A stretch of DNA of 64,000 nt, from the IMG/VR virus record IMGVR_UViG_3300038441_001119, positions 124,001 to 188,000 of that record; one strand, given 5' to 3'. The first letter of the stretch is position 1. Each line of letters begins with the position of its first letter. Both the position numbers and the translations under genes were made by a program. Shown in pieces: positions 6,975-24,196 of the stretch. The notes beneath the pieces were generated by a model. The model saw only the letters and a program-made list of their open reading frames with translations. It ran no database searches and was not told the origin of the DNA.

Positions 6975-9900
6975 TTACGTGGAGACAGTTGTCTCTTTTC
7001 TTGTTTTCTTGTTGATCACGGCTTCCGCCATGTTCTTCTTGTAATAACCGATCATCGCTTCCAGTTCGTCTTCAAGATGTTCAAGCTCCTTGGGAGTTGT
7101 TATCTCCTTCAAAGCCTCATCATCAAGCTTCCCTGACGACCATGAGCGGTTAATTTCAGTTTCAATAGGGTAATTGAGGTATCTACCGTCGTAGTCCCAA
7201 ACCACCTTCCTGAACATGAAAAGTTCATGTGCCTTCTGCCAAATGTTGACCTCCGCAATAGGACAGAGGGTCACAACAGCATCATACAGTAGCACCATTG
7301 GTCGGCCTATCAAGCCTCTTGTGATGCCAAAATGCAAAAGATTCTGAGCAGCGATTGCAGACGTGGAGGCGACACTTTCCTGTAGAGGGGTGTTACGACA
7401 TTCACGTCCCTGTGCGCTCATCAGGGCATCCCATACACGAGGGTCCATCGTTTTTCTGGAATGGGTCCCCAACCAGTGTCGAATACGACCTGAGGCAAGC
7501 CTGAGGTGGTCTTCTGACTTAGGCAGCTCCTGTTGCTCTTCCAGATACGCCGTTGCGACGGGCTGGCGTTCCTGTAGAGCATCAAGGATACCCTGCCCGT
7601 CTCCGGGGTTGGGTTTGGCCCCTGTATCCGCTTCAATTTTGCGTTCAAGACTATTACCCGAGGCCCCGTATGCAGATGAGAAATTCCCCACCTTACCTGA
7701 GCCGTCACGGTCTTTCTTCTTATCCAACGCTTCCCGTGGTAACTTCTTGAACATCTCAGCGAGCGACCAGTGCAGGTCCTCCTTTCCGGGATGAACGATG
7801 TTACCGTTTTCATCACGAAGCAGATCGTCTTCAGTGATTTTCACCCATACAGTCGGTTCCTTTTCCTTACCTTTCTCTTTGGCTTCAGGGTAGGCTAGGA
7901 TGTACTTATCAAATTGGTTTTCTTCGGGAATACCGCAATCCTTCTTATAGTTCAGACGGACCGGGTTCTTTTTCTTTTTGTCCGACTTAAGGAAGCCGAA
8001 CTGTTTATCCGGGAGAGTGACCAGATCAATCAAGTTCTGATCTCCTGAGATGAATGCAAGTCCACGAATCTCAGCGGTCTCATAGTCTGATTCCACCATG
8101 AGCATACCCTCTGGAGCAGTGACTACCGAACGGATGGACGGCAGTGCTTTCTCCAGATAGATGTGCCAACGCTCAGGAAGTTCACCTTCCTTGTGCAGAG
8201 ATTTGAACAGGGCTGCTACCCCTTCCTCGATACGCTTGTTCACGTACGACGGCCAGTTGAGGATGTTTGGTTTCCAACAACGGTTACGGGCGGTTTCGGT
8301 TACAGAGGAGTTATAGTGCACCCTACCGTCTTTTGCGATCCAGTAGTGCAAACCATTCTCTTTAACCAACTCACCATCGTCATCATACTCTGCGGGTTTG
8401 AGGAACGCCTTTGCGGCGTTACCGACAGCATTGAAGTCCAACAGGAGGTTCAGAACCGGGTCCTTGTAGGTCACGGAGAACATCTGCAGGGACTGTTTGT
8501 CCACGGAAGGTGCGTAGTTTTGTCTTACATCTTTGGGCAGGTTCTTGACCTTGCTCCAATCCATTGACGGGAACCCTTGTTCCTTTTTATTAGTACTTTT
8601 TACTGGTTCGTACTGCTTAATATCGAACAGCCACCGTCGCATCTGTTCCGGGGCGCGAATATTAAATTCAGGTGCGTTCAGGTAATGACCGTGAATGGCG
8701 ATAGCATCGGATACATGATCCGTACCGAATGCTGCTTTGAGTTTGTCCAAACTAGGACCCTCAGGGTCGCTCATGTAATCACACGCGAGCGCCAACCCTT
8801 CTTCTTCATCTCCGACTACCCGCTGGCAAACTTGTACAACCAAATGAGTGGCTTCTCTGGTCATGGTGACTTGGAATCTCTTCTCAAGTTCAACCTTGGC
8901 GAATTGGTACAAGTCACGCAGCTCATTGAGCTTCTCCATGTCCACAGGCAAACCTTCATAAGAGAAGTTGGTGAACACGTCGGTCGTGAAGGGATTAAAG
9001 ATAGTTTCGTAGTACTGCGTCAGCTGTTGTCGCTCCATCTCTTGTACGAGGTATGGATAAGCTCGCATTACCACGTCAACGTCCGCCATTGCATACGGTA
9101 GCAACAGATCGTCAGGGATGTCGGCATATCCATCGGAGTGACCCAGAGGATGTGTCTTCAACCATATGACGAGAGGCAGGTCATACCGACCCAAGTCCGT
9201 ATACTTCAGAGCAAGATTGTCCAAACCGAGATCTGCGTGTTCGTTACAGCATTGCTGCGCGAACTCAGTGTCCAGAAGACACTTCTTATAGATCTCAAGG
9301 TTCAGCCACTTCTTCATCCATACGGCGTCCGCAGAATAATGGTGACCCAGATACTTTACCTCTTTTCTGTTCAACCAAGCACCCAGCACCTGACCCACCT
9401 TTTCATAGGAAGCATCAAATACATAGTTACGTTGGTCGTCCATGAATCGAATGGCACATGCATGCCCTTCTTTCCAACAGAACTGGATGGTACGTAGGTT
9501 ACCGTCGATAAAGTTGTTCCCACCCCACTCGCAGTCCACCGAGATGAGGGTGTGATTTTCTTGTGCCCACATAGTCACCAGATCCACAACTTGTTCAAGG
9601 TTGTTGATCACGTGATACGAGGTCTTCATGCGTTTGGTTTCGAAGCCACGTATGGAGTCATACATGTTTCGAATTTCAAATAGATTGATCCTGAATTTCT
9701 CCACGTAGTCTGGACGTGAAGCAAGCAGGTGAACTGGGTCAAGGAGGATGAAGCGACAGTCATACTCCTTGTTATAGAACCACCCCGCTTTGATGTCATC
9801 AGCTCGGTATTTGACCGGGCTGAAGAAATCAAATACCGCCTTACCGAGACATACGACTATCTTCGGTTTTACTTCCCTCACTTCACTGTCGAAGGAGGGG

Positions 9901-10322
9901 GAGGCAAAGCGTAGCGAGGTGGCGTCTGGCTTCAAACGTTTAGCCTTTGGTAGAAGCCACTTACACATCGCAGTGAAGTAGCAGTCATCTAGGCTTATTC
10001 CCGATTGCTGGATGAGGTCCTTGAGGACGCTACCAGCGAGACACTTCATGTATTCCGGAGTTTCCTTGATCGGCTTCTCATATCGTTCACCCTGCCGGTA
10101 TTCAACCGCGTCCTCAGACAGTAGGGAGGGCATCACGAACATGATATCTGCAGGGCTTTTACCGTTCCCTGCTACATACAAAACTTCGTCTTTCCTGCGG
10201 GTCGTAGTAATCTTGGCAGGTGGTTCTTCCTCGAAGTTAGGTTGTGTCGGATTGTCAGGGACGTCTGTGCGTGGTCCCTGCTTCTTTTTTTGCTTTCTCT
10301 CAAAGTACTCGTTGAAATCCAT
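6975..10322 (-). CDS. polA: Family A DNA polymerase with N-terminal UDG-like domain and 3'-5' exonuclease
   Basis: Exo I SVDCE; Exo III YAMAD; motif A SDYETAEIR; motif B R...KVGNFSSAYG; motif C LLYDAV; N-terminal YFTAMCK/PKIVVCLGK family-4 UDG pattern. Confidence 0.92.
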   Translation of the reverse strand: MDFNEYFERKQKKKQGPRTDVPDNPTQPNFEEEPPAKITTTRRKDEVLYVAGNGKSPADIMFVMPSLLSEDAVEYRQGERYEKPIKETPEYMKCLAGSVLKDLIQQSGISLDDCYFTAMCKWLLPKAKRLKPDATSLRFASPSFDSEVREVKPKIVVCLGKAVFDFFSPVKYRADDIKAGWFYNKEYDCRFILLDPVHLLASRPDYVEKFRINLFEIRNMYDSIRGFETKRMKTSYHVINNLEQVVDLVTMWAQENHTLISVDCEWGGNNFIDGNLRTIQFCWKEGHACAIRFMDDQRNYVFDASYEKVGQVLGAWLNRKEVKYLGHHYSADAVWMKKWLNLEIYKKCLLDTEFAQQCCNEHADLGLDNLALKYTDLGRYDLPLVIWLKTHPLGHSDGYADIPDDLLLPYAMADVDVVMRAYPYLVQEMERQQLTQYYETIFNPFTTDVFTNFSYEGLPVDMEKLNELRDLYQFAKVELEKRFQVTMTREATHLVVQVCQRVVGDEEEGLALACDYMSDPEGPSLDKLKAAFGTDHVSDAIAIHGHYLNAPEFNIRAPEQMRRWLFDIKQYEPVKSTNKKEQGFPSMDWSKVKNLPKDVRQNYAPSVDKQSLQMFSVTYKDPVLNLLLDFNAVGNAAKAFLKPAEYDDDGELVKENGLHYWIAKDGRVHYNSSVTETARNRCWKPNILNWPSYVNKRIEEGVAALFKSLHKEGELPERWHIYLEKALPSIRSVVTAPEGMLMVESDYETAEIRGLAFISGDQNLIDLVTLPDKQFGFLKSDKKKKNPVRLNYKKDCGIPEENQFDKYILAYPEAKEKGKEKEPTVWVKITEDDLLRDENGNIVHPGKEDLHWSLAEMFKKLPREALDKKKDRDGSGKVGNFSSAYGASGNSLERKIEADTGAKPNPGDGQGILDALQERQPVATAYLEEQQELPKSEDHLRLASGRIRHWLGTHSRKTMDPRVWDALMSAQGRECRNTPLQESVASTSAIAAQNLLHFGITRGLIGRPMVLLYDAVVTLCPIAEVNIWQKAHELFMFRKVVWDYDGRYLNYPIETEINRSWSSGKLDDEALKEITTPKELEHLEDELEAMIGYYKKNMAEAVINKKTRKETTVST

Positions 10323-10943: not shown

Positions 10944-11327
10944 TTAGAGTTTCATAACGCGGTGGCAGCGGAGGCCGTCGTCGCTCTTACGGAAAGAGAA
11001 CTTGGTATCCGGATTGCGTTTGCTGAAGTATTGAGCTGCTGCCACACAGGCACGTCCTTCTGTAGTAGTGTAGTCTTCTCCTTCCATGAAGAAGCTGTCG
11101 CCAACTTGCATGTTGAGGAAAGGATACTGGTCCATCGAGGCGCGTTTGCGACGAGGGAAGGGGATACCTTTCTCGATCACATATTTCGAAGACGCCAACA
11201 GCACTCCGGTGTCTGCTTCGATTTTGCTGACACTGGTGGTGATCTTCGGATTCCGAACACCGCTGACGGTAGTGGTTTTGATGGAAGTGAAGATTTCCGA
11301 GCTGGTTTTGATATTACGGGTACTCAT
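10944..11327 (-). CDS. Small putative DNA-binding phage protein
   Basis: IEKGIPFP...YPFLNMQVGDSFF...FSFR motif. Confidence 0.7.
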   Translation of the reverse strand: MSTRNIKTSSEIFTSIKTTTVSGVRNPKITTSVSKIEADTGVLLASSKYVIEKGIPFPRRKRASMDQYPFLNMQVGDSFFMEGEDYTTTEGRACVAAAQYFSKRNPDTKFSFRKSDDGLRCHRVMKL

Positions 11328-12526
11328 TTAGATTTAGGCCAATTATTTTTGATAATACTTTCACACTTTTTGTCGCTCATTTCCCCGAAGTCTTTGTATT
11401 TGTCCGGTGGTGCAATGAGGACAACTTGTAGTCCAACACTAGACAGCATTTCAACTGCCTTGGTTACGCTGGCTTTACCAGTATCATCGTTATCCCGTGC
11501 ATAGAACACGAGATCAGTCGACTCTTTGATCTTGGATGCTTGTACATAGGACACTGTGGGACCGCACATAGGGAGACCCTCAAAGCCGAATCTAGCGGCG
11601 TCTAGGGGTCCTTCTGTGAGTACTGCGTGCCTGTCTTTCCGTGGGATATCCTTAATATGTTCTATGTAAGGATCGTAGCCCATCCATATTCCAGACTTAC
11701 TCTGCCCAGTACCATTTTTGTACTTGGATGGAGGCCATTTGAATTTGGCTGGTGTAAGTTCTGGTATGAAGTGAGGTTTTCCCGATTTACCTTTTCCAGT
11801 GGCTACCTTCACCATCTCGTGTTTGTACGGATGGTAATAGTAGATATTTCCTTCATCATCTTCCGCTTCGATCAACCTTGCCTGCCACCCTTTACGGATG
11901 CCATTCATGTAACCGAAGAAAACAACCCGACCCTGTGGAGTATCTTTCCAGTCCTTGATAAGGTATGGATAGTAGACTCCGTTTTCTGTTGTCGGCGTCA
12001 GTTCTGTTTTACAGAACGATGTACGAAACTTGTCGTACAGGAAACCAACATCGTATCCACGGTTTTCCAGATACCACCGGGCCATGTGGTCTGGTTTTAG
12101 ATCCTTGAGAGGTATACACTCGCCGGGTCCAAACGGAAATTTGTTCCCATGCTCGTCCTCTTCAAGGATGTGTTCTTTAGACGTGGAATTTAGAACGAAC
12201 AAGGTGGTGCTAACCTTCTGTTTGAGTCGTGTAGACACGGGCGGCATACCTAGTAGGGTCTTACCCTTGTATCCGGTCCCTTCTTTCATACAGGTTGCAA
12301 CCCATCCCTCTTCTTTCTCGCCGTCCATCTGAGACAACCATTCATCCAAACGGATGGCGAGGTGACGGCTGTTGAGTTCCTTGGACCCATCTTTGCGCAA
12401 GCACTCAGGGCATGGTATGTACAGGACACTACCGGAGCGTTCCTGTTTCATGTGACCATTACCATGAAGTCTGCACAGCGTGGATGCTAGGATCTTCAGC
12501 CGCTGTTGTCTCATGTTCTCGCTCAT
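11324..12526 (-). CDS. dnaG: DnaG-type DNA primase
   Basis: N-terminal Zn finger CPEC...H...C; TOPRIM TEGPLDA and RDNDDTG. Confidence 0.88.
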   Translation of the reverse strand: MSENMRQQRLKILASTLCRLHGNGHMKQERSGSVLYIPCPECLRKDGSKELNSRHLAIRLDEWLSQMDGEKEEGWVATCMKEGTGYKGKTLLGMPPVSTRLKQKVSTTLFVLNSTSKEHILEEDEHGNKFPFGPGECIPLKDLKPDHMARWYLENRGYDVGFLYDKFRTSFCKTELTPTTENGVYYPYLIKDWKDTPQGRVVFFGYMNGIRKGWQARLIEAEDDEGNIYYYHPYKHEMVKVATGKGKSGKPHFIPELTPAKFKWPPSKYKNGTGQSKSGIWMGYDPYIEHIKDIPRKDRHAVLTEGPLDAARFGFEGLPMCGPTVSYVQASKIKESTDLVFYARDNDDTGKASVTKAVEMLSSVGLQVVLIAPPDKYKDFGEMSDKKCESIIKNNWPKSK

Positions 12527-13701: not shown

Positions 13702-15195
13702 TTATTTCCTCTCCTCCATTCTCTGCATTCCGAAATTCCGACGGAAGGGGACTGCACCGCCCTTGCCGTATCGACACTTTCCCACGAACAAGATCTGTTC
13801 AGGTAGATACAGCTCAGCCGTACCTCCGGACTCAGAAATGTTCTTATTCTGCATAGCTGACATGCCGATAACGGCAGCTACACCTTTTGCAGGAGCAAAG
13901 GATTCACCCAGATGCTCCTGACTGACGAAGGGTGTGTTGACCCCCTTCCTGTTTGTCTGTGCCAGATAGAGCACACAGATACTATGCTTACGAGCTGCTT
14001 GCAGCAACTGGGAAGCGGCATCTGCATAAACGTGACGGAGCTTGTCTCCTTCATCACTGGTACCCTTGGTGCCGGTCATGGTGTCTAGAGCGCCACCAAG
14101 CCAGTCAAGGATAATGAAGTCAGGAGCTTGCCCCTTGGCCTCCTTGAATTTGGCGATGATGTCCTCGAAAGACTCGTCGACATTGTCTGGAATAGTCCAG
14201 TCAATCATCCACAGGTTTTCGGTCATCTTCTCTTTCATCTCCTTATACTGAGCCTGCTTCTTCGGATCAGGCATGTCTTTCTTCGGATCGAAGTGACCCG
14301 CTATGTTGGACAAGTGCTCCCAGTCATAATGACAACAGTGGGAGATCAGACGTAGCTTGATGGAGGAAGGCGTTTCCTCAGTGGAGATAACTATACCCTT
14401 CAGGTTTTGAAGGATACAAAAGTTGGCGAGCATCTGGATAGTGAACGTGGTTTTACCCACACCAGTGTACGCCAGAACGAGATAGGTATTGGCTTTTCGA
14501 TAACCGCCTCCAAGAGCGCGGTCAAGCGCCTTCATACCAGTAGAAAGGCGCTCAAGGTCGTCCTTGGTTGCAAGCTCGACTTCATCGAATGAGAAAATAG
14601 TCTTCCCTTTTGGAGTATCACTAACATCCAAATCAGAAGCCTGTTTGAGAAGGCGTTTAAGGAGTGCGTTTGGGTTACGCTTGATTTCTCCAGAGTTCTC
14701 AGCTCTGGACATCTCCTTCTCGTACCGTACAGCCGTAAGCCACAGCTTGTACATCCCCGGAATAAGCATCACCGCTCGTTCCGATTTGGAGATCTTGATG
14801 ATCTCCTTCCATTCATTCTCCAGATCAGGAAGATCTCCCGCATTACCCATGTCCGGGTACTTCGAGAAGAAAATCTCACAGATCTGCGCCATGATCTTCC
14901 AATCAGGCGTTGTTACCGCTTTCTTTGATCCATCGACACCGACCAGTACCATGTACATGCGGAATGCCACAAACAGGATGTTCCGCGCCCGGGAATTGAA
15001 GTCCAGATGGAATCGACCATTTGGTTTATCCTGACAGACAAGATCAAGCCACTTCTTATGCTGTCCATAGTCCAAGACCACGGCAGCCATTGCGTTACGT
15101 TCAAACTCGTCCGGGTTGTCGTTGTAAAGTTTCTCGAAGAACGTGGCCGTGATGTCTATGGTCGGAGCAGCTTGCTTCGTATTAATGTGCGTCAT
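13702..15195 (-). CDS. dnaB: DnaB-like replicative helicase
   Basis: TGMKALDRALGGG; Walker A AYTGVGKTT; STEE; IILDW; LAQTNR; KCRYG. Confidence 0.9.
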   Translation of the reverse strand: MTHINTKQAAPTIDITATFFEKLYNDNPDEFERNAMAAVVLDYGQHKKWLDLVCQDKPNGRFHLDFNSRARNILFVAFRMYMVLVGVDGSKKAVTTPDWKIMAQICEIFFSKYPDMGNAGDLPDLENEWKEIIKISKSERAVMLIPGMYKLWLTAVRYEKEMSRAENSGEIKRNPNALLKRLLKQASDLDVSDTPKGKTIFSFDEVELATKDDLERLSTGMKALDRALGGGYRKANTYLVLAYTGVGKTTFTIQMLANFCILQNLKGIVISTEETPSSIKLRLISHCCHYDWEHLSNIAGHFDPKKDMPDPKKQAQYKEMKEKMTENLWMIDWTIPDNVDESFEDIIAKFKEAKGQAPDFIILDWLGGALDTMTGTKGTSDEGDKLRHVYADAASQLLQAARKHSICVLYLAQTNRKGVNTPFVSQEHLGESFAPAKGVAAVIGMSAMQNKNISESGGTAELYLPEQILFVGKCRYGKGGAVPFRRNFGMQRMEERK

Positions 15196-15871
15196 CTTCT
15201 TCTGCCTTCTTCGTCAAATTGTTATAGCTTTTACGGACATCCTCGACGGTTATTCCGGCGATTTCTTCCAAAGCGATGGGACGATAGTTTGATGCATCCA
15301 GCCAGTCAAGTGCCTCCTTACCATACTCTCTCATAATCCTTGCGGACTGAGGTAGAACAGCTACACGAGTCACTGCCATACAATCAAGTAGAACAGATCC
15401 GACCACCTTCTCTTTTTCTTCCATGTGGGAAGCCGAGAAAGGGTCCAGCTTACGAGCTTGCATACAGCTGAAGACTGTCTGTATATCAAATGCCAATTCA
15501 AGACTGTCCGGATTGGCGCAGTCTGCGATACTCAATTCAAAGATATCCAAGGCTTTAACATACTCGTCCCAACAGTTGTTGACGAACGATGCAGATTTCA
15601 GCTGGTTCTTGAATAGCTTCCTAGCCGCGTAGGGGTTTGAGTGTTGTCGTAATACCGATTGCTTGAAAACAGCACGAGTTACAAATGACGGGGGTGCTCC
15701 GATCTCCTTGCAGATAGCAGCAAATGTAGCCCACTCTGAGGGCACTTCACCACACTGACGACCCGGATCACCGTCGCGTTTTACTTCGTTAGCCCATGCG
15801 GCTTCGCAAGCCTCCCAAGCAGGATTTTTCTTCTTGGGTCTATCCTCTTCATAAAAGAATTCTTCACTCAT
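15182..15871 (-). CDS. Hypothetical protein (possibly helicase-associated)
   Basis: Directly upstream of dnaB; start MSEEFF inferred. Confidence 0.7.
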   Translation of the reverse strand: MSEEFFYEEDRPKKKNPAWEACEAAWANEVKRDGDPGRQCGEVPSEWATFAAICKEIGAPPSFVTRAVFKQSVLRQHSNPYAARKLFKNQLKSASFVNNCWDEYVKALDIFELSIADCANPDSLELAFDIQTVFSCMQARKLDPFSASHMEEKEKVVGSVLLDCMAVTRVAVLPQSARIMREYGKEALDWLDASNYRPIALEEIAGITVEDVRKSYNNLTKKAEEDDAH

Positions 15872-16043
15872 CTTCTTGAAACTCCTTACCACAGGAACGA
15901 CACACATCGTTTGGCTTCGCTGTTACAACTTTATGAACCCATAAACACGGATCGTGGTCCGGCATATTTGGGTCTGAAGTTTCCTCGTAACAATGAGGAC
16001 ATATGAACGTGTCATCCTCGGTAAGATAAAGTGTCTTATTCAT
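15864..16043 (-). CDS. 59-aa zinc-ribbon protein
   Basis: Hand-translated MNKTLYLTEDDTFICPHC...CRSCGKEFQEDE; overlaps both neighbours; fills the gap. Confidence 0.7.
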   Translation of the reverse strand: MNKTLYLTEDDTFICPHCYEETSDPNMPDHDPCLWVHKVVTAKPNDVCRSCGKEFQEDE

Positions 16044-17524
16044 TTTGCTGTGTTCTTTTTGACCAGCTCTTGCATTTTGACAATAAGCTCGTCTCTAGTG
16101 TTCACCCAGTGAATGTTGTACCCTTTTTCCTTGTAGATAGCATAGCGATTATTTGAATCCCTCGCGAGATTGTTGTAGGCACTTTGCGGTCTTGAGTCAT
16201 CAAATGGGAACATGAAATCCACCATGATTCCGGTGACTTTACCTGTGCCCGGCCGGATCTCCGCGAGACGACCGGGTTTCTGGACTGCGTTGGTGTAGGG
16301 GCCGCCTCCTGAGAGGTTGACCACAACACGAACATCGCTGAAGGTGACTCCCTGTGAATAGATGTCAGACGCAAGACAACGTTTGAGCACATTGTCTTTC
16401 ATCATCTCAGTCAACTCATAGCGTTCGTCGCCTTTGAGGAGCTTGTCCATCGCGATAAGCGGGTTGCCTCTCGTGATGAAATCCTTCTGGTACTTGGCCT
16501 GCTTCTCATTCTTGATGAACATCAGCGTCTGCCAGTCCTGCGGGATAAGCTCGTCGCAAATATGCCCTGTTATTCCACCCACGACGGGGTTTTGGAACAG
16601 GTACTTGCGTATGGCAGCATCTCTGTTGGCAGGACACTGCCCCTTGTCTGCCGGATCAACTACGACCAGCACGACATCCAACTGACAAATCGCCCCCTCC
16701 TTAACCGCCTCTTGATAAGTGCGGTTAACAAGAACGGGTCCGAGCAGTCCCTCGATCAATGGGTCCTTCCCATCGAATCTACCTGTAAGGGACGCGCCGT
16801 ACCCGTAACGCAATGCACGACTGAAGGCCCTCATATAGGGAATGCGGGAGTCTGTTACGCATGCGTGTGGTTCGTCTACAAGCAGTAGTTTGGTCTTGGA
16901 GAAGCTACACTTATCCAAGCTATCCATACTGCAAACAGTGACATCATCGGACTGGAAGCGAGTCTTTGAACCCGCTCCAATCAGTTTGACTTCCCGATCA
17001 GGAAGCCATTGGAGTGCAGCTTCATACATCTGGATCACTAGATCCTTGCCGGGAGCCGTCATCACCGTAGTGGTGTGCGGCATTGCCCGGACTGTGTTGT
17101 ATATGAGAGCACTCTTTCCATAGCGTGTCGGTGCTCCGATGAGACCACTCTGACGTCGCTTCAGTGCTTTCGTCAGAAGGTCACCTTGGGAGAATCTGAA
17201 GCCGTACATTTTAGAAAGGTCCAGCGCCGGTAGAGCCTCGCGCTGATCATGTACTTCAATCATAACCTCGTTTTCCACGGCCCACATCATTACCCGCTCA
17301 ATGAAGCCTTGGTCTGTCTGGATGGTTCTATAAGGTTTTTCCTTAAGAACCTCAAACAGCTCGTGCTTGACCCTACGGGTAATGCGTTTCCATGGACACT
17401 TGGGGTCCTGTACCAGCTCTTTCACATAGATCGTGAGAGCTTCCTTTTCCAGCTTCTTGGCACTATTGACAACAGTAAGAGTGTCAGTAGTCCATATCAA
17501 ATGCATCTTTCCTTTTTTATCCAT
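16040..17524 (-). CDS. Superfamily 2 helicase (UvsW-like)
   Basis: APTRYGKS, DEPH, SQGVTF, QKPGR motifs. Confidence 0.88.
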   Translation of the reverse strand: MDKKGKMHLIWTTDTLTVVNSAKKLEKEALTIYVKELVQDPKCPWKRITRRVKHELFEVLKEKPYRTIQTDQGFIERVMMWAVENEVMIEVHDQREALPALDLSKMYGFRFSQGDLLTKALKRRQSGLIGAPTRYGKSALIYNTVRAMPHTTTVMTAPGKDLVIQMYEAALQWLPDREVKLIGAGSKTRFQSDDVTVCSMDSLDKCSFSKTKLLLVDEPHACVTDSRIPYMRAFSRALRYGYGASLTGRFDGKDPLIEGLLGPVLVNRTYQEAVKEGAICQLDVVLVVVDPADKGQCPANRDAAIRKYLFQNPVVGGITGHICDELIPQDWQTLMFIKNEKQAKYQKDFITRGNPLIAMDKLLKGDERYELTEMMKDNVLKRCLASDIYSQGVTFSDVRVVVNLSGGGPYTNAVQKPGRLAEIRPGTGKVTGIMVDFMFPFDDSRPQSAYNNLARDSNNRYAIYKEKGYNIHWVNTRDELIVKMQELVKKNTAK

Positions 17525-17540: not shown

Positions 17541-19640
17541 TTAGATGAAGACCATTTCTTCTTCAAATTCAGAAAACATTCCCGGAGCAGTTACGCTGAC
17601 AGGAATTGCGTCTTCAAGTTGTCTGTCGAAGAATTCCCAAGATGATCGCGGACTGGGACCACAGCCAAACCGATGCATCAGGGACGTGGTCTTTTCTGGA
17701 ATAGTCGCATCACTGAAATTAGTGAGAACCATTTCCTGTGAGATGTAGTTACCATCGAACAGACGACCAGTACCGTTTACAAGGGGTACATTGAGAAGAG
17801 TCTCTGTATCTTCGCAGTTGGCAATCTGATCTCTGGCAAAGGCCAACAGTTTCCTGTAGTCGTACTCTCCAGAGGTAACAAATTGTTCAACAAAGCCAAT
17901 AACAGGGTACAGCTCTTTTGCTATGTCTTCCAGTTGTTTCCACTGTGCGACAGTGGCTGCATGTTGGTTCGGAGCGACAAGATGGGCGTGGTGGCTGGCG
18001 GCGCTCAGGGAAAGAGTCATGTTGATGCTGGCCAACCACGGCAGCCCTGTTCTAGACAGACCTCCGGGGACAGCTTTGACCATGGCGGGCATGACGAAAT
18101 CCTCATCTTCCAGTCTTCCCCACTCGTTCTCAGTAGTAGGAATCCAACTTGGTCCCATGTGGTTGTTGCAGACGTCCGCAGGAGACATCCACAGAGTGGT
18201 CAGATAAGTGCAATACAGCGTATCAACTTGAACGTGGTTACCGCGCATGAGCATGTCTGCAGACTGTCCCGCAGCATACATCTGGGGATGCTGCATAGAA
18301 ATACCATAGCTGTAAGGGTCGTTTCTGGCGTAGACGCCCCAGCCTTCCGCAGTATTAGCTTCAGCCCTAAAAGACGTCGTCCAGCGCGTGGTTCCCCGAG
18401 GATTATCACCCGGACCAAGCTGTGGTAGCCACCAAGTGTTCCGCTTATCTTCCTCCGCAACGGCGGTATAACCTCCTTTACGGATGTCGACGGTCATCTT
18501 GGTGTCAGTGCAACTTCCATTTTCCACCTCACGAATAGTGCGGTTACGATGAAAGACCTTCATCTTGTGATTGGTCTGAAACGCCCGGAACATGTGTTCC
18601 GTTCTCCGAAGACGCAGCAGGTTCACACGAATGTTACCCTCTCCTTCGACGTCGGTGGTAAGGCCGCTCACGTAGAGATTACAGAAGCCAACATCTACGG
18701 GCATCTCACGGAAAGGCGCTTTGACTTTGTACGCCAAGGTGAGTTTGCGGTTCTTGAGTCTAGCCATACCTTTGGCGTAATTCTCCACCTCAACCGTACC
18801 TGTATTTTTGTACAGAGAGAAAGTAGACTCCATGAACCGGTCACCGTTGGATGCCATCTCCATCGTGTGATGTGCTTGCTGCACTCGGTCACTGATGTAA
18901 TGAACAATGGTACTCTCGATCCGAATGTTACCGTTATCCATCATCTTGATAAACAAGCTGACAGGACGCTGGTCACCTGAAGGATCATGGACCATACATT
19001 GATGCCCCTTTACCCGAACCAGTTCCCCGTCCTTGGTTCCCCACAGTTGCTTGCCTTCCGCATTGGTGTGCGTAAAGACTTCGATGGACGAGGTTACCCG
19101 TGTGTCCGTACTGGGGATATACCTTGCGAAGTGATGCGCATTGCTCTCACTGTAAGTACGTGAGACAACACCTCCTCTAGAAAGAGGAGCAACTGCCAAA
19201 GAAGTCCCTCCTCCATTGATGGCGGCGAAAAGCGGAGTGTCAATGGACATAGATGAATCTATACCGTTGGTCCTCATAATCGTGAACGAATCGCTTCCCG
19301 AAACCAGCTGCAGTCGCTCCGAAGAGGTGTTGAGGTTGATGTTCATGGCTGCTGCTAGAAAATCCTCCATCGTAGACAGAGTCATTCCAGTTGCCTCACC
19401 TATCGTGACATCTACTGGAGAGCCAATCGTCTTGGAAAGAACATCGCGGTCAAAGCCAGTAGCAAAACGCATGAAAAAATGAACAGGGGAGAGGGTTGCA
19501 CCTTCTCCGTCTGGTCGATGGTAGTCCTCACGTTGCTGAGGACCGTACCGAACGGCGCCGATGACGCTGTTCGGGTGCGTTGGGCTGATGTAACGTTGAT
19601 ACGTGTCCCCTCCGCGTACGAAATAGTTGATTACTCTCAT
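17541..19640 (-). CDS. 699-aa hypothetical protein with C-terminal tag (SEFEEEMVFI)
   Basis: Long ORF, ATGA-coupled to the RAMP gene; no recognisable catalytic motif. Confidence 0.8.
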   Translation of the reverse strand: MRVINYFVRGGDTYQRYISPTHPNSVIGAVRYGPQQREDYHRPDGEGATLSPVHFFMRFATGFDRDVLSKTIGSPVDVTIGEATGMTLSTMEDFLAAAMNINLNTSSERLQLVSGSDSFTIMRTNGIDSSMSIDTPLFAAINGGGTSLAVAPLSRGGVVSRTYSESNAHHFARYIPSTDTRVTSSIEVFTHTNAEGKQLWGTKDGELVRVKGHQCMVHDPSGDQRPVSLFIKMMDNGNIRIESTIVHYISDRVQQAHHTMEMASNGDRFMESTFSLYKNTGTVEVENYAKGMARLKNRKLTLAYKVKAPFREMPVDVGFCNLYVSGLTTDVEGEGNIRVNLLRLRRTEHMFRAFQTNHKMKVFHRNRTIREVENGSCTDTKMTVDIRKGGYTAVAEEDKRNTWWLPQLGPGDNPRGTTRWTTSFRAEANTAEGWGVYARNDPYSYGISMQHPQMYAAGQSADMLMRGNHVQVDTLYCTYLTTLWMSPADVCNNHMGPSWIPTTENEWGRLEDEDFVMPAMVKAVPGGLSRTGLPWLASINMTLSLSAASHHAHLVAPNQHAATVAQWKQLEDIAKELYPVIGFVEQFVTSGEYDYRKLLAFARDQIANCEDTETLLNVPLVNGTGRLFDGNYISQEMVLTNFSDATIPEKTTSLMHRFGCGPSPRSSWEFFDRQLEDAIPVSVTAPGMFSEFEEEMVFI

Positions 19641-20200
19641 TCTTTTTTGGTGTCAGTCTTAACAGCAGTACTCGGTAGTCCGAGTATGCTGGCGATTTCG
19701 GCTGGAGTAGCCCGCTCTAGTTCGAGCAGGCTAAACCTTCCGTATTGATATTTGTTTCCCCATTGCGAGATCCCATAGAACTTCCCGATGCAATGCAGAA
19801 TGTCTGCCACATCTTTTTCATCGGGAGGCATGAGTCTCGTAGAGGATTGCTTTTGTCGTTCTTTGGGTACAGCCGTTGAAGCGAGAACATTCACTGTAAG
19901 CACAGCGCCTGCTCTGACAGCTTCGAATACTTCCTGTTTTGGAGCACCACCAACCTTGAAGTTGCGTCGATGCTCCACGGTGGTTGGAGCCGCAAACGGA
20001 AGGATCTCCCGTAAGCACTCCGAGTCCAAGTCTCCTTCCCTGTTCATAGTCGAGAGGGATTCAGTTACAGCCCACTGCCAGTGATCCAGAGGAACCACGA
20101 CATTGAAGTCACGGTCACGTAAGAGTGTCCGTATCTGGTTCTTTCCTCTGACCACACCAAGCAAGGCTGATGTCATTTTCAATTTGGCAGTGTAAAACAT
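19637..20200 (-). CDS. Stand-alone Cas7/Csm3-like RAMP-fold protein
   Basis: First strand ending in conserved G (YTAKLKMTSALLG); FEAVRAGAVLTV; C-terminal G-rich loop IGKFYGISQWGNKYQYGRF. Confidence 0.6.
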   Translation of the reverse strand: MFYTAKLKMTSALLGVVRGKNQIRTLLRDRDFNVVVPLDHWQWAVTESLSTMNREGDLDSECLREILPFAAPTTVEHRRNFKVGGAPKQEVFEAVRAGAVLTVNVLASTAVPKERQKQSSTRLMPPDEKDVADILHCIGKFYGISQWGNKYQYGRFSLLELERATPAEIASILGLPSTAVKTDTKKE

Positions 20201-20203
20201 ATT

Positions 20204-20662
20204 TTATGCTATTGCTAAAGCTGGCTTGTTATAAGCCGCTTTCAGTTCAGTGACTACTTCCTTTCCCTGCGCAGACAGGGAACGTGTCCGAGACCATGGT
20301 CCTTCCTCCTTCCAACAGTCGTCACGGTCATGTAGGGCCTGTATGTCATTCCAGAATCCCTTAAGAGGGTAATACGGAGCTTGTGGCGGAATATAGTGCC
20401 CCCGGAATTCAGGTTTCAGAATATCCTCACCTCCTCCACAACCTCCGATACTTTGGAGGTTTTCGATAGCGGAGATATTTTCTATTAGTTTCTTCCTGCC
20501 TTCATCGGTACAACAAAGAGAGAAGGCACATACAACACCGTTCCCGCCGTCGTAACGGCAGGAAGTCGTGATTCCTTCATCTCCATCATCCATATCGACT
20601 ACCGATCTGGGATTGTTTTCGTAGTGTTTGACTACGTAATCAATGATTTCTATTTTGGTCAT
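20204..20662 (-). CDS. Hypothetical phage protein
   Basis: SCRY...CAFS...IQALHD pattern. Confidence 0.7.
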   Translation of the reverse strand: MTKIEIIDYVVKHYENNPRSVVDMDDGDEGITTSCRYDGGNGVVCAFSLCCTDEGRKKLIENISAIENLQSIGGCGGGEDILKPEFRGHYIPPQAPYYPLKGFWNDIQALHDRDDCWKEEGPWSRTRSLSAQGKEVVTELKAAYNKPALAIA

Positions 20663-23115
20663 TTGCTTTCAATGTGTAGGATGTTGCCGCAGTTCTCCAA
20701 GACCTTCTTATCGTGGTCACACACGATGATCTGGGAGTTACCTGCGAACAGCGTCTCACTCAATTTACCCAATAGCTCGGACAACTGCCGCTTGCTCTCG
20801 TCATCCAAGTGGAGCGAGGGTTCGTCCAAGACAAGCAACCCGATATTCGGGAGCAGTGTCCTCTGAACAGCGATAAGGAACGCCAAGGAAAGTCGAACCT
20901 TCTGACCACCCGACAGATAATCCTGCGGAAGCCAGACGGAGTTCGGTTTCATCATACGGAAGTCGAAGGTAAGAGGAACCGTGGCGGACGGGCGGATCTC
21001 ATAAGTGGTGTCCAGCGAAGCGAGGATATCCGAGACTGCGTCCGTGATATACTCGAATTGCCGTCTGATATACAGTTTGGGTATCTCATCCAGCTTAGCT
21101 GACAACCTCTCCAGACCGGCGATGAAACTAATCTTCTTCTCTCCTTTACGAACCTTATCCTCGTAGTCCGCAACCTCTTTTGCAAGGGCTACGAGACGTG
21201 CGGTTAGTGCGCGTTTTGAGGCTTGAAGCTCTTGGTATTCCGCTTTTCGGTCGGAAAAATCCAGAGCAATATCTGAGACACGATCAAGACTAAAGTCAGG
21301 AAGGTCAAGCTCAGCAATTTTAGCGTCAAGCTTTTCAGAGTCGCCCTTTCGCTCATGTTCAAGATTTTGGATCTCACGTGTGTTGCGTTCTATTGTGGTT
21401 AATGTGGTGTGGCGCACTTTTTGTGCATTGGTGAGTTGCTGAAGCTCCTCATCAATCTTAGCAATACCTTTGTCCAGTTCCTCCACGGAAGTACCCTCGG
21501 CCTTGATGTCGGGGATCTCGCGTAGGGCTTTGTTAGTCCACTCCAGTTTCTCAGTCAGAGACTTGATCTTCTTGTCATAGAAGTCACGGGCACCTTTCAT
21601 TGCTGAATACTGTGCTGCCTCTTTTCGTGCTACCGCGATAGGGTTGTCACTCTTGAGTTCCTCGAAGTCGTCAATGTTCACGAATCGCTTGAACAGTTTC
21701 ACACCGGGGTAGTTGGAGATACGTTCCAGATCCGTACGTTTTTTGAACCACTTCTCAGTGAGAGTCTTCAGTGCCTGACTGTGTTCCGCTATAGCGCCCT
21801 TGTAGACCGCTGCAGCGTTGGTTAACTCAGTCAAGTTAGCTTCCTGCTTGTCGGTCCACTGAAGTCGCTCAGAATCCACCTGAGACTCACAGAAGGGGCA
21901 GTCACAACCAGCCTTATTTGACAGCCGGAAGGCTCTGACTTCTTTGAGTAGGGCAATCCTGTCGACCAGCCTTTCCAGCTCCTCTTCCACCTTGGAGATC
22001 TTTCCCGCATCATCTTTCAGGTCATCCACCGATTTCTTCAGTCGGTCAACTTCCTTACTGGTGACACAGTACTCATGGAGGTTACCATCCCAGTTTACAG
22101 TAGCCGCAAGTCCTGCTTTATCCCATTCCGCTACAATAACTTCACCTATGGGGCAAAGAGTCTGCAGGTCAGGTAGAGCGAACAAGTCAGTGTGCGCTTG
22201 TACGATACCATCAGTGTATTCCTTTTGTTCAGCCTTAAGCTTGGCAGCCGTAGCTGCAAGCGAATGCGAAAGTTTAGCGGAAGTCAGTTGTGCCTTCTGA
22301 CCGTCCAGTTCCTTTCTTTTACTATTGTCAGCATCAATATCTGGTCCAAGGGTAGATCCTAGTATGGAATTTTCCTGCGAAAGAGCTGCACGTCGCTTCG
22401 AGAAATAGATCATTCCCGTCGCAAGCGTTTCGATCTCTGTAAGCAGAGTGTGCTTTGCTACGACCCCTTCTTCATCCAGAACTTTGAGCTTATCATTGGT
22501 TTCTTCTAATTGGGTCTGCGTTTGGGTGTACGCCGCTACAGAGGATTCCAATAGCGGCATATAGTTGATCGCTCCTGCTTTGAGGAGCTGTACTCGGCTC
22601 TTTACGTGTCCAGACGCTGCGCGCATGTAGTCTGCGTCCAGCACCCGCATAAAGAGCTTCTCACGTTCAGAACCTATGCTACCGAGCAGGTGTGCTAGTG
22701 TCCCCTGTGAGATAAAAACAAGACGCCCGAGTGTGGAAGGGTCGGCACCAAACATGGAGGCCAACCGTTCGTCCACTTTCTTCGCTGCGGTAATGATTGG
22801 TTCATCACCTATCCGAAGAGTGCGCTCAGTGCTTGAGTGTTTGATCGTTTTAACAATCTCCACCAGTTCTCCTTGCGGGGATTCGAGAACGGTTTCGATT
22901 ACTGCCTTACCTTTTGGGTCGAGGTCTTTGATGTAGGAAGATGCTTTACGCGAAGCTTCCGAGAATTCATTGGCTACCACATACCTGAGGGTATTGAGTA
23001 GCACCGATTTACCGGAACCGTTTGCACCGATGACACCGAAGAGGTTACTCCCCAAGTCGACATCAAGTTTCGCATGAGGTCCTACATTCGTTAGCTTATG
23101 CGAAAGAATTTTCAT
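20659..23115 (-). CDS. sbcC: SbcC/Rad50-like SMC ATPase
   Basis: GANGSGKS Walker A; CPFC zinc hook in coiled coil; LSGGQ signature; LVLDEPS Walker B; H-loop. Confidence 0.93.
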   Translation of the reverse strand: MKILSHKLTNVGPHAKLDVDLGSNLFGVIGANGSGKSVLLNTLRYVVANEFSEASRKASSYIKDLDPKGKAVIETVLESPQGELVEIVKTIKHSSTERTLRIGDEPIITAAKKVDERLASMFGADPSTLGRLVFISQGTLAHLLGSIGSEREKLFMRVLDADYMRAASGHVKSRVQLLKAGAINYMPLLESSVAAYTQTQTQLEETNDKLKVLDEEGVVAKHTLLTEIETLATGMIYFSKRRAALSQENSILGSTLGPDIDADNSKRKELDGQKAQLTSAKLSHSLAATAAKLKAEQKEYTDGIVQAHTDLFALPDLQTLCPIGEVIVAEWDKAGLAATVNWDGNLHEYCVTSKEVDRLKKSVDDLKDDAGKISKVEEELERLVDRIALLKEVRAFRLSNKAGCDCPFCESQVDSERLQWTDKQEANLTELTNAAAVYKGAIAEHSQALKTLTEKWFKKRTDLERISNYPGVKLFKRFVNIDDFEELKSDNPIAVARKEAAQYSAMKGARDFYDKKIKSLTEKLEWTNKALREIPDIKAEGTSVEELDKGIAKIDEELQQLTNAQKVRHTTLTTIERNTREIQNLEHERKGDSEKLDAKIAELDLPDFSLDRVSDIALDFSDRKAEYQELQASKRALTARLVALAKEVADYEDKVRKGEKKISFIAGLERLSAKLDEIPKLYIRRQFEYITDAVSDILASLDTTYEIRPSATVPLTFDFRMMKPNSVWLPQDYLSGGQKVRLSLAFLIAVQRTLLPNIGLLVLDEPSLHLDDESKRQLSELLGKLSETLFAGNSQIIVCDHDKKVLENCGNILHIESK

Positions 23116-24196
23116 GTTTCGTAATATACTGCTCCAACACTGCGTGCGGGCTATTGTCCTTTTTGACGATATTGAAGGCGAGTGCCTGCAGATCGTCGTC
23201 TTCTCCTTCCATCAGTTCCTGAGCCACATCAATGATAGACACGGACACAACGTCTCCGGTCATAACCTCGTGAACGGCTTTCGCTGTTCTTGGGGTGATG
23301 TTCTTCTTTCGTACAATGTCAAATGGACCAGTGTGGATGTGCAGAGCATTGACCACGTCCTCGTACTCATTGGTGTAGTGAAACCAAACAAACCTAGGAA
23401 CACCGCCTGTAGAATGTAGTAACTTTTCAGCAGGTTCCACATCTTCAGGAGCAGCCACTTTAACAATCACTACGGGTGTGGTTGGAATCTTGTGCTGCTT
23501 GAATCCTTCAAACTTACCGGTCTCGACGTTAAACTCATGGACCACGATGTACTTGCTGGGGTCCTCATCAACGTCCGTCATTTCCACAGGACCGGGATAT
23601 CCGATCACGGAGTCTTCCGTCGTAATGTACGAGCATACGTGGATATCTCCAAGCATCCAGTTCCGTGTGTAGGATCTGTCAAAGAATTCCTGCGCTGCCG
23701 GATATTTACCTCCACCAGTGAACTCAATAACGCCTCCATGCCATAGAGCGATATCGGTAGGTTCTCCGGGGTTCTCCTTCAATCGTTCAAACAGTTCGTT
23801 AGGGGTTTTGGTTTTGTACCCCACTATATGCAGTTTCGTACCACGGATGTTGATCCGTTTGTTATCCACACTGACAATGCCAACGCCGTCAGGATGGTTG
23901 TACTTCTCAATCCACGGGGGTTCATCCCAGTCATGGTTACCCGTCAGGGTGAACATTGTCATGCTGCGTTTCACAAGCTCTTCGTGGAGCCTGTCCAGTA
24001 GTGACACTGGATACGAGCCATTACGACTCGCATCCAGAATGTCACCCGAATTCACGATGTACCTGACGTCGTTATCGAAGAATGCTTTGATGCCCTCTAG
24101 GCAAGCATTGTAGATAGCGTCAGCGCGAAATTTCTTACCGTACTGAGTAGCACACAAGTGCCAGTCAGATGTATGTCCAATTTTTATCTTTGCCAT
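23096..24196 (-). CDS. sbcD: SbcD/Mre11-like nuclease
   Basis: SDWH, GDILD, GNHD, LGDIH, YPG metallophosphoesterase motifs; adjacent to sbcC. Confidence 0.92.
   Translation of the reverse strand: MAKIKIGHTSDWHLCATQYGKKFRADAIYNACLEGIKAFFDNDVRYIVNSGDILDASRNGSYPVSLLDRLHEELVKRSMTMFTLTGNHDWDEPPWIEKYNHPDGVGIVSVDNKRINIRGTKLHIVGYKTKTPNELFERLKENPGEPTDIALWHGGVIEFTGGGKYPAAQEFFDRSYTRNWMLGDIHVCSYITTEDSVIGYPGPVEMTDVDEDPSKYIVVHEFNVETGKFEGFKQHKIPTTPVVIVKVAAPEDVEPAEKLLHSTGGVPRFVWFHYTNEYEDVVNALHIHTGPFDIVRKKNITPRTAKAVHEVMTGDVVSVSIIDVAQELMEGEDDDLQALAFNIVKKDNSPHAVLEQYITKHENSFA

What the first reader, a model, noticed from the sequence alone, without database searches (positions are those of the whole stretch)
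19637..20200. Orphan minimal Cas7-like RAMP in a phage replication operon, with no CRISPR array or cas genes
Seen: a 187-aa protein with the ordered hallmarks of Cas7-group RAMPs: first strand ending in G, a P-containing strand/helix, E-x-[VI]-x-x-G-x-x-phi, and the C-terminal G-rich loop G..YGISQWGNKYQYGRF. Established: such proteins normally oligomerise on crRNA. Context is sbcD-sbcC-orf-RAMP-orphan-SF2 helicase-Zn ribbon-dnaB. Inference: a non-CRISPR RNA- or ssDNA-binding filament, used in recombination, as an anti-CRISPR decoy subunit, or guided by an RNA encoded elsewhere. I found no adjacent repeat RNA.
Basis: partly seen in the sequence, partly recalled or inferred. Interest (0 to 1): 0.75.

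Follow-up and report, generated by a model that had tools for sequence, protein, structure and literature searches.

The report
Repeat-less Vipr/Cas7-like RAMP in phage recombination operon
A 187-aa gene in a 212-kb soil phage is predicted to fold like the CRISPR Cas7 / viral Vipr RNA-binding subunits, yet it has no repeat RNA and is a fixed gene of the phage's DNA-repair and replication operon, which bears on what such proteins did before RNA-guided immunity.

Summary

It is not a standard VIPR. No pentanucleotide repeat RNA occurs in the whole 212-kb genome or in 44 related loci, while the same scans recover all four SUSP1 vrRNAs. The model also lacks a helical bundle between β1 and helix-1, where I place the SUSP1 Vipr bundle.

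The gene lies between SbcC and an XPB-like SF2 helicase in 42 of 42 informative loci. It diverges in step with both neighbours.

My best reading (inference) is a guide-less, single-strand nucleic-acid-binding RAMP that serves recombination and replication. A trans-guided VIPR-like role is not excluded. I file it as a new variant of a known kind; interest is moderate to high.

The parts
19637..20200 (-). Gene for the 187-aa single-RRM RAMP (Vipr/Cas7-like). Topology: β1, α1, β2, thumb hairpin, β3, α2, G-loop, β4, then a short C-terminal tail.
   Evidence: ORF; family of at least 150 representative clusters; AF2 pLDDT 95.8; RAMP fold matches
20156..20197 (-). Codons 2-15: strand β1 with conserved basic K6 and K8, ending in the nearly invariant L14-G15.
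   Evidence: Alignment A1 and column statistics; DSSP of the model
19916..19981 (-). Codons 74-95: long β-hairpin (thumb) carrying conserved Y/H77, R79, F92 and E93.
   Evidence: Strands E74-83 and E86-95 in the model; conservation
19733..19786 (-). Codons 139-156: end of helix α2 plus the glycine-rich loop (G139, G143, S145, W147, G148, G154, R155, F156). This is the only stretch with detectable sequence similarity to Vipr.
   Evidence: Invariant columns; profile hit to PDB 36pp_D SUSP1 Vipr; hhalign 85% over 41 columns
19640..19711 (-). Codons 164-187: lineage-specific C-terminal tail with a weak sigma-70 region 4-like helix-turn-helix signal. It is absent from most homologues.
   Evidence: PF08281 E 0.011, below cut-off; homologues end near residue 162
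23096..24196 (-). SbcD/Mre11-like nuclease, first gene of the conserved module.
   Evidence: Metallophos, phrog_100, NCBIfam SbcD/Mre11
20659..23115 (-). SbcC/Rad50-like ATPase. In relatives the RAMP gene follows it directly.
   Evidence: SMC_N, phrog_77, Rad50 NCBIfam; synteny
20204..20662 (-). orf152, an insert between SbcC and the RAMP gene that was not found in the related loci compared.
   Evidence: No phmmer hit in 36 IMG/VR loci; in L003, L005 and L009 no separate gene is called between SbcC and the RAMP gene; belongs to widespread viral hypothetical clusters
17541..19640 (-). orf699, an orphan in the variable slot between the RAMP gene and the helicase.
   Evidence: No family hit; no similarity to the 618-aa and 681-aa ORFs in the same slot of L003 and L009; ESM pLDDT 0.25
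16040..17524 (-). SF2 helicase (ResIII + Helicase_C), nearest solved relative archaeal XPBII. It is the conserved downstream partner of the RAMP gene.
   Evidence: its start overlaps the RAMP gene in L012, L020 and L022
13702..15195 (-). DnaB-like replicative helicase, at the end of the tight operon. A Zn-ribbon ORF (15864-16043) and orf241 (15182-15907) lie between it and the SF2 helicase.

Best explanation
**What it is.** The gene encodes a minimal single-RRM RAMP of about 160 core residues: an RRM core, a thumb β-hairpin and a glycine-rich loop. No helical bundle is inserted between β1 and helix-1. It belongs to a previously unannotated family that I found only in metagenomic sequence, in contigs sharing this replication module with the 212-kb soil phage here.

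**Where it sits.** In that clade it is a fixed, vertically inherited gene of the operon SbcD - SbcC - RAMP - XPB-like SF2 helicase - DnaB-like helicase. It is not part of a mobile interference island, and it has no cis-encoded repeat guide RNA.

**Proposed mechanism (inferred).** Protomers bind single-stranded nucleic acid on the RAMP face. That face comprises β1 K6/K8, the basic loop at residues 24-28, helix-1 W41/W43, thumb H77/R79 and G-loop S145-W147-G148...G154-R155-F156. As with Cas7 and Vipr, the protomers would polymerise along the strand.

The likeliest substrate is the ssDNA, or an RNA-DNA hybrid, exposed when SbcCD and the SF2 helicase process ends or forks during recombination-dependent replication. 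Four Pfam models (SSB, gp32, Enc34/gp2.5-type, RecA) detected no SSB or RecA-type recombinase in this phage.

**Shown versus inferred.** Shown: fold, family, conservation pattern, synteny, co-divergence and absence of repeats. Inferred: nucleic-acid binding, polymerisation, the substrate and the role.
For: **Fold.**
- AF2 pLDDT is 95.8 and pTM 0.89.
- Foldseek against PDB: type VII Cas7 8z4j_J E 5e-7, Csm3 6xn3_F TM 0.58.
- AFDB clusters: ranks 1, 2, 6 and 29 are four of the five published Vipr seed proteins (seeds listed).

**Sequence.** The A1 profile's only RAMP hit in PDB is SUSP1 Vipr. hhalign against a type II Vipr alignment gives 85% probability over α2, the G-loop and β4, pairing W147 with Vipr W178.

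**Binding surface.** Conserved basic and aromatic residues lie on β1, helix-1, the thumb and the G-loop. Median family pI is about 8.9.

**Context.**
- 8 of 8 informative family branches have the order SbcC - RAMP - helicase.
- Starting instead from the helicase, 34 of 34 IMG/VR loci have the RAMP gene in that slot.
- RAMP pairwise identities track those of the helicase and SbcC (Pearson 0.88, Mantel p about 0.001). Median identity is 27%, between SbcC at 23% and the helicase at 42%.

**No guide RNA.**
- Base-agnostic period-5 scans find 4 of 4 SUSP1 vrRNAs but nothing above shuffles in the genome, in 7 loci, or in 710 kb of 36 further loci.
- The most degenerate form, G every fifth base, gives 94 hits against 101 in shuffles, and none is intergenic.
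- No CRISPR-like repeats were found and no hammerhead ribozymes.
- No conserved non-coding DNA is shared with relatives.

**No SSB or RecA detected**.
Against: - No experiment or computation here shows binding to any nucleic acid, oligomerisation, or contact with SbcCD or the helicase.
- The failure to detect an SSB or RecA is weak evidence. Most ORFs of this phage are unannotated and any of them could supply that function. The gp32 and Enc34 models also rang in none of the control genomes.
- Synteny within one phage clade could reflect shared ancestry rather than functional coupling.
- Both junctions of the gene are insertion hot-spots, so it is not always adjacent to either neighbour.
- A thumb Arg plus G-loop Trp pair cradles a specific guanine in SUSP1 Vipr. 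A similar pair here would fit sequence-specific RNA binding at least as well as generic ssDNA coating.
- vrRNAs can be supplied in trans in VIPR biology.
Confidence: 0.45

Rival explanations
1. It is a genuine VIPR-type RNA-guided DNA-binding or silencing protein. Its guide is supplied in trans (by the host, a satellite or another phage), or has a form my scans cannot see, such as a non-periodic or non-pentameric guide. The neighbouring SF2 helicase would then act as its accessory (vap-like) protein.
For: - Its best AFDB structural neighbours are the published Vipr seed proteins.
- The only sequence-detectable relative in PDB is SUSP1 Vipr.
- Some VIPR types carry helicase or nuclease accessory genes, and some encode only one, degenerate vrRNA.
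- Orphan vrRNAs that act in trans exist.
- A conserved thumb Arg (R79) and G-loop Trp (W147) recall the R138/W178 pair that cradles G2 of the GGY motif in SUSP1 Vipr.
Against: - No period-5 array of any composition occurs in the complete 212-kb genome or in 44 related loci, while the positive control is recovered in full.
- The gene has no flanking intergenic space and sits in a tight operon.
- The model shows no helical bundle between β1 and helix-1. The thumb and the α-bundle are the two domains said to enable gapped base pairing in VIPR.
- It is strictly core and co-diverges with replication genes, unlike the small VIPR loci, which relatives of SUSP1 have lost by deletion.
Confidence: 0.25
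2. It is an RNA-DNA hybrid (R-loop or primer) handling factor. The RAMP would bind phage transcripts or primer RNA and stabilise or mark R-loops at replication origins or stalled forks. The XPB-like helicase and SbcCD would then resolve them.
For: - RAMPs are RNA binders by ancestry, and SUSP1 Vipr forms R-loop triplexes.
- In several relatives (L012, L020, L022) the gene overlaps the start of an SF2 helicase.
- It lies in the same operon as the DnaB-like helicase and close to the primase-like gene and the PolA fusion.
Against: The evidence is purely contextual. No origin-like element or conserved non-coding RNA was detected near the module. Nothing here separates this reading from plain ssDNA binding.
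Confidence: 0.12
3. It is an anti-CRISPR or anti-VIPR decoy. As a Cas7/Vipr mimic it would poison host effector complexes or soak up rival guide RNAs.
For: It has a RAMP fold without its own array. Competition for VIPR components between mobile elements is documented.
Against: - It shows no sequence similarity to any Cas7 model in Pfam, NCBIfam or PADLOC.
- It occupies the same slot in 42 of 42 loci, whose SbcC proteins share as little as about 18% identity. Known counter-defence genes, to my knowledge, tend to be patchy and fast-turnover.
- It lies inside the replication operon.
Confidence: 0.05
4. It is a degenerate RAMP fold used only as a protein-protein adaptor of the SbcCD/helicase machine, with no nucleic-acid binding.
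For: It has tight operon coupling with both neighbours.
Against: The most conserved residues are those that form the RNA-binding surfaces in Cas7 and Vipr: the G-loop, the helix-1 aromatics, the thumb Arg and basic β1. The family is also basic overall.
Confidence: 0.06

Closest known systems
Vipr proteins of VIPR systems (Escherichia phage SUSP1 Vipr, PDB 36pp; seed X1U2U4; bioRxiv 10.64898/2026.04.26.720920 and .720927)
   Same: - Both are phage-encoded, roughly 20-kDa, single-RRM RAMPs with a thumb and a G-loop, outside any CRISPR locus.
- X1U2U4 is the best AFDB structural hit (E 2.8e-7, TM 0.55-0.57).
- They share a motif spanning α2, the G-loop and β4, including the G-loop Trp and the final G-R-F.
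- Both have a DNA-acting gene next door.
   Different: - No pentanucleotide vrRNA is present anywhere.
- No flanking intergenic regions are present.
- The model lacks a helical bundle between β1 and helix-1. I place the SUSP1 bundle there from K33 being an α-bundle residue and from the A2 consensus; no SUSP1 model was superposed.
- Sequence similarity is limited to 41 columns.
- It is a core gene of a replication/recombination operon rather than a two-gene accessory locus.
- The family is known only from metagenomes and is absent from the GenBank phage collection, and no family member appears among AFDB or BFVD hits.
CRISPR Cas7-group RAMPs (Csm3, Cmr4/Cmr6, type VII Cas7, Csf2)
   Different: - There is no CRISPR array or Cas10, and no other RAMP in the genome matches PF03787. 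Other cas families were not searched genome-wide.
- It matches no Cas7 sequence model.
- It is much smaller than most Cas7s.
- No conserved acidic residue occupies the loop after β1, where Csm3 and Cmr4 carry their catalytic Asp (position of that Asp from my own knowledge; conservation).
Cascade plus Cas3, or type IV Csf plus DinG (a RAMP filament that recruits an SF2 helicase/nuclease)
   Same: The gene-neighbourhood logic is similar: RAMP + SF2 helicase + nuclease (SbcCD).
   Different: - The helicase is XPB-like, not Cas3 or DinG.
- There is no large or small subunit, no Cas5/Cas6 and no guide.
- The resemblance is a lead from my own knowledge, not a tested relationship.
Phage ssDNA-binding proteins and recombination mediators that work with Mre11-Rad50 homologues (for example T4 gp32/UvsY with gp46/gp47)
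   Same: This is the proposed functional niche: a small basic protein encoded with the end-processing nuclease and helicases of a phage replisome. The four Pfam models tried detected no SSB or RecA in that phage.
   Different: The fold is unrelated (RRM/RAMP rather than OB fold). The function is inferred only.

Membership tests
RAMP superfamily (structural) | Ferredoxin-like RRM core (β1-α1-β2-β3-α2-β4) | tested here: met
RAMP superfamily (structural) | Glycine-rich loop between α2 and β4 | tested here: met
   G139, G143 and G154 are invariant and G148 is nearly invariant (97%) across 74 sequences.
RAMP superfamily (structural) | Thumb β-hairpin (Cas7-group feature) | tested here: met
CRISPR-Cas Cas7 (Csm3/Cmr4/Csf2) | Match to a curated Cas7/RAMP sequence model | tested here: not met
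   No hit in Pfam (including PF03787), NCBIfam or PADLOC for the protein, nor in Pfam for any of the 74 family members at E<=0.1.
CRISPR-Cas Cas7 (Csm3/Cmr4/Csf2) | Encoded with other cas genes and a CRISPR array | tested here: not met
   No repeat arrays in 212 kb. No PF03787 match elsewhere in the genome. The neighbours are SbcCD and helicases. Other cas families were not searched genome-wide.
VIPR system (Vipr + vrRNA) | Single-RRM RAMP structurally similar to Vipr (X1U2U4) | tested here: met
   X1U2U4 is rank 1 in AFDB clusters. Three more of the five published seeds rank 2, 6 and 29. CRISPR RAMPs score about the same.
VIPR system (Vipr + vrRNA) | Sequence homology to Vipr | tested here: inconclusive
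   Profile against PDB: SUSP1 Vipr is the top hit but E is 0.2. hhalign against a type II Vipr alignment gives 85% probability over the C-terminal 41 columns only.
VIPR system (Vipr + vrRNA) | vrRNA: tandem pentanucleotide repeats (YNNGG or NNNGG/YNNNG/NNNNG, or other fixed trinucleotides) in or near the locus | tested here: not met
   Nothing above shuffles in the complete genome or in 44 related loci. The control locus L002 gives 4 of 4 vrRNAs.
VIPR system (Vipr + vrRNA) | α-helical bundle domain that, with the thumb, enables gapped base pairing | tested here: not met
   Residues 10-37 between β1 and α1 form short strands, not helices. Whether every VIPR type has the bundle is not known to me.
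VIPR system (Vipr + vrRNA) | Small accessory locus (vipr + vap) flanked by long intergenic regions | tested here: not met
   It sits in a nine-gene operon with overlapping or near-touching junctions. It is present in 42 of 42 clade loci and co-diverges with SbcC and the helicase.
VIPR system (Vipr + vrRNA) | Membership of one of the seven published VIPR types (for example a helicase-associated type) | not testable with these tools
   The figure and data files that define the types are not held. The text says only that types III-V encode nucleases or helicases.
VIPR system (Vipr + vrRNA) | Forms an RNP filament on RNA and binds dsDNA programmably | not testable with these tools
   This needs biochemistry or RIP-seq. 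No RNA run holding this sequence was listed.

The most novel reading that the evidence does not exclude
RAMPs have a housekeeping form. In this phage clade a guide-less (or transcript-using) Vipr/Cas7-like protein would be an integral subunit of an Mre11-Rad50 / XPB-like helicase recombination-replication machine. This repair-associated state could be the ancestral role from which RNA-guided VIPR, and later CRISPR effector backbones, were derived.
Probability: 0.18. Interest if true: 0.88.

Novelty: new variant of a known kind. Interest (0 to 1): 0.66.

Why it matters
VIPR, described in 2026 preprints, moved the proposed origin of CRISPR effector subunits into phages. Every RAMP characterised so far works with a repeat-derived guide RNA.

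This is a deep RAMP family with at least 150 clusters at 50% identity. It has no repeat RNA and sits permanently in a DNA end-processing and replication operon.

If it binds ssDNA or arbitrary RNA, it shows what a RAMP does without a guide. It would then be a candidate for the pre-interference state of the fold. If it uses a hidden guide instead, it extends RNA-guided DNA recognition to a replication-coupled setting with a nuclease and a helicase attached.

Either outcome can be tested directly with one small, well-folding protein.

Tried and rejected
**Searches that found nothing**
- Word-indexed protein search with the protein: only itself. With the family alignment: three hits only, because of candidate limits.
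- tblastn of three family members and of the helicase against 50,697 GenBank phage records: no match.
I went through the helicase instead.
- Public sequencing runs: only soil-metagenome DNA runs hold the locus, and no RNA run was listed.
- Promoter and terminator scan of the operon: fewer promoter-like sites than in shuffles, so uninformative.

**Candidate guide RNAs examined and rejected**
- The run of G at every fifth base at genome 207340-207400 lies inside a 535-aa ORF.
- The GGNNN x5 run at genome 71543-71567 lies inside the tmRNA.
- The gaps between SbcC and the RAMP gene in some relatives are filled by variable protein-coding inserts, not RNA genes.
- Intergenic gaps of the genome show no period-5 signal and no conservation with relatives.

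**Readings rejected**
- orf699 as a conserved large-subunit-like partner: the same-slot ORFs in L003 and L009 are not detectably similar, and most relatives lack any such gene.
Full report
**Observation**

Window 19637-20200 (-) is an intact 187-aa ORF. It lies in a tight minus-strand operon:
- SbcD 23096-24196
- SbcC 20659-23115
- orf152 20204-20662
- the target gene
- orf699 17541-19640
- SF2 helicase 16040-17524
- Zn ribbon 15864-16043
- orf241 15182-15907
- DnaB-like helicase 13702-15195

A primase-like gene (11324-12526) and a 1115-aa UDG-PolA fusion (6975-10322) lie further on. Junctions overlap or are a few bases apart. The window is bases 124001-188000 of a 212,352-bp virus record that CheckV rates as complete. 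The DNA runs that hold it are soil metagenomes.

**Family**

Pfam, PHROGs, NCBIfam and PADLOC give no significant hit for the protein. The only signals are a sub-threshold sigma-70 region 4 match in the C-terminal tail and one weaker sub-threshold hit.

An exhaustive HMMER scan of 1.84 billion representatives finds at least 150 clusters at E<=1e-3, 58 of them at E<=1e-10. Members are 130-250 aa long and cover query residues 1 to about 162.

In a 74-sequence alignment the invariant or nearly invariant columns are L14, G15, W43, E93, P126, G139, G143, S145, G148, G154, R155 and F156. Conserved basic residues (K6, K8, R24, R28, R79, R155) and aromatic residues (W41, W43, Y77, F92, W147, Y153, F156) are also present. 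Median family pI is about 8.9.

All ten sampled clusters come from Logan, ENA or JGI metagenome assemblies, and none from NCBI or UniRef. GenBank phages have no homologue.

**Fold**

AlphaFold2 with the family alignment gives pLDDT 95.8 and pTM 0.89. The element order is β1 (2-9), α1 (38-51), β2 (63-66), a long hairpin (74-83 and 86-95), β3 (100-107), α2 (128-142), the G-loop, and β4 (156-163).

| Search | Result |
|---|---|
| Foldseek vs PDB | 84 hits at E<=1e-3; all 50 listed are CRISPR effector complexes or RAMP subunits, led by type VII Cas7 and Csm3, probability 1.00, TM about 0.55 |
| ESM Atlas | TM 0.66 to a PF03787 cluster |

**Link to VIPR**

The family profile's best PDB sequence hit is 'SUSP1 Vipr protein' (36pp_D, E 0.2), aligned over α2, the G-loop and β4. 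This led to three 2026 preprints from one laboratory and a fourth that recovers VIPR arrays independently.

According to these papers:
- VIPR systems are phage-encoded single-RRM RAMPs (Vipr) that polymerise on vrRNAs.
- vrRNAs consist of 9-16 YNNGG pentanucleotide repeats, or variants of that motif.
- The complex binds dsDNA by a gapped code and silences competing mobile elements.
- Seven types are described, with accessory vap genes that include helicases and nucleases.

In AFDB clusters, the best hit for my model is X1U2U4, the paper's PSI-BLAST seed. A0A1F4YLN4, A0A2D6XG06 and A0A0F9A1L0, three more of the five published seeds, rank 2, 6 and 29. CRISPR type III RAMPs are interleaved with them at similar scores.

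I fetched the SUSP1 locus (L002). Profile-profile comparison with a 38-sequence type II Vipr alignment gives 85% probability over 41 C-terminal columns. It pairs W147 with Vipr W178 and G154-R155-F156 with G183-R184-F185.

**Why it is not a standard VIPR**

*No vrRNA.*
- Base-agnostic column-information and conserved-column scans at period 5 recover all four SUSP1 vrRNAs. Their scores are 4.8-6.1 against a shuffled maximum of 3.4.
- The same scans find nothing above shuffles in the complete 212-kb genome, in seven 16-21-kb loci of relatives, or in 710 kb of 36 further loci.
- The weakest published form, NNNNG, shows no excess (94 hits against 101 in shuffles), and no hit is intergenic.
- There are no CRISPR-like repeats and no hammerhead ribozymes.
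- Intergenic gaps show no period-5 signal, and no non-coding DNA is conserved with relatives.

*No helical bundle.* The model has short strands, not helices, between β1 and α1. In SUSP1 the α-bundle contacts the target backbone next to the skipped base (K33), and the thumb and bundle are the two domains said to enable gapped pairing. I place that bundle between β1 and helix-1 from K33 and the A2 consensus; I did not superpose a SUSP1 structure.

*Different context.* VIPR loci are two-gene units flanked by long intergenic regions. This gene has no intergenic flank on either side.

**Context is the strongest new result**

- Eight of eight informative family branches, down to 21-25% identity, have the order SbcD - SbcC - RAMP - (0-1 variable ORF) - XPB-like SF2 helicase - x - DnaB-like. 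A UDG-PolA fusion follows in the three loci that reach far enough (L015, L020, L022).
- Starting from the helicase instead, 36 IMG/VR loci were fetched. All 34 whose upstream region is held carry the RAMP gene between SbcC and the helicase.
- Across 42 loci, RAMP pairwise identities correlate with those of the helicase and SbcC (Pearson 0.88, Mantel p about 0.001).
- Median identities are 27% for the RAMP, 23% for SbcC and 42% for the helicase.
- orf152 and orf699 of this window are lineage-specific inserts in two insertion hot-spots flanking the RAMP gene.
- The helicase's nearest solved relative is archaeal XPBII.

**Mechanism**

Fold, conservation, synteny, co-divergence and absence of repeats are shown. 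The rest is inferred.

The protein most likely binds a single-stranded nucleic acid on the canonical RAMP surface and polymerises along it. It would serve the SbcCD/helicase end-processing and recombination-dependent replication machinery.

Four Pfam models (SSB, gp32, Enc34/gp2.5-type, RecA) detected no SSB or RecA in the phage. This is weak support for such a role. I put this reading at about 0.45.

The main rival is a VIPR-like RNA-guided function with a trans-encoded or unrecognisable guide (about 0.25). It is kept alive by the Vipr-like thumb Arg and G-loop Trp pair, and by documented trans-acting orphan vrRNAs. An R-loop or primer-handling role (about 0.12), a decoy (about 0.05) and a pure adaptor (about 0.06) follow.

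**Novelty**

The fold and the idea of phage RAMPs outside CRISPR are now known, so the finding is not categorically new. This family does not appear in the databases the VIPR authors mined, and it fails three VIPR features (vrRNA, α-bundle, accessory-locus organisation). It is instead a core gene of a repair and replication operon.

I could not check whether it equals one of the seven published types, because the defining figure and data files are not held. I therefore file it as a new variant of a known kind.

Noticed in passing
L064:11696-12156 (genome about 71396-71856, outside the window): The phage encodes a full-length tmRNA (Rfam RF00023, 103 bits).
   Followed up: no
L061:723-1272; L062:10277-10351; L064:5922-6075 and 11424-11591; L065:8553-8627: The genome has about ten tRNA genes. 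ARAGORN calls three of them with odd 4-nt anticodons (ccta, gaaa, tttg), although Rfam scores them as tRNAs.
   Followed up: no
L066:4210-4246 (genome about 103710-103746): An 'abiF RNA' motif sits just above its Rfam gathering score (38.8 against 37 bits, E 0.004). It may be chance.
   Followed up: no
window 17541-19640 (-); L003:10567-12423; L009:10498-12543: The slot between the RAMP gene and the helicase holds a 600-700-aa orphan ORF in three related phages. The window's ORF shows no BLASTP similarity to either of the other two. Other relatives have an RNA ligase, a small ORF or nothing there. ESM gives pLDDT 0.25 for orf699.
   Followed up: partly
window 20204-20662 (-): orf152 is a Cys-rich 152-aa protein from widespread viral hypothetical clusters (TM 0.67-0.68). 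It is inserted between SbcC and the RAMP gene in this genome only, among those sampled.
   Followed up: partly
whole genome G000: No SSB (PF00436), gp32, Enc34/gp2.5-type SSB or RecA was detected in a 212-kb phage that encodes its own PolA, DnaB-like helicase, primase and SbcCD.
   Followed up: partly
window 6975-10322 (-): The DNA polymerase is a 1115-aa fusion of a family-4 uracil-DNA glycosylase domain with PolA exonuclease and polymerase domains. The same fusion occurs in relatives (L015, L020, L022).
   Followed up: no
P0063 (L020:10001-10750) and relatives P0041, P0073: Some family members carry a 60-90-aa C-terminal extension. AF2 models it as three helices (160-171, 176-188, 201-223; pLDDT about 82-90). 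It may be a DNA-binding or small-subunit-like module. The window's protein has only a short tail with a weak HTH-like signal.
   Followed up: partly
window 20174-20200: The public gene call for this protein starts at the second ATG (179 aa, P0001). That start would remove strand β1. Homology supports the 187-aa start.
   Followed up: yes
L039:8744-11242 and L045:8573-11098: In two relatives the helicase open frame (stop to stop) is about 830-840 codons instead of about 490. This suggests an N-terminal fusion or an insertion such as an intein.
   Followed up: no
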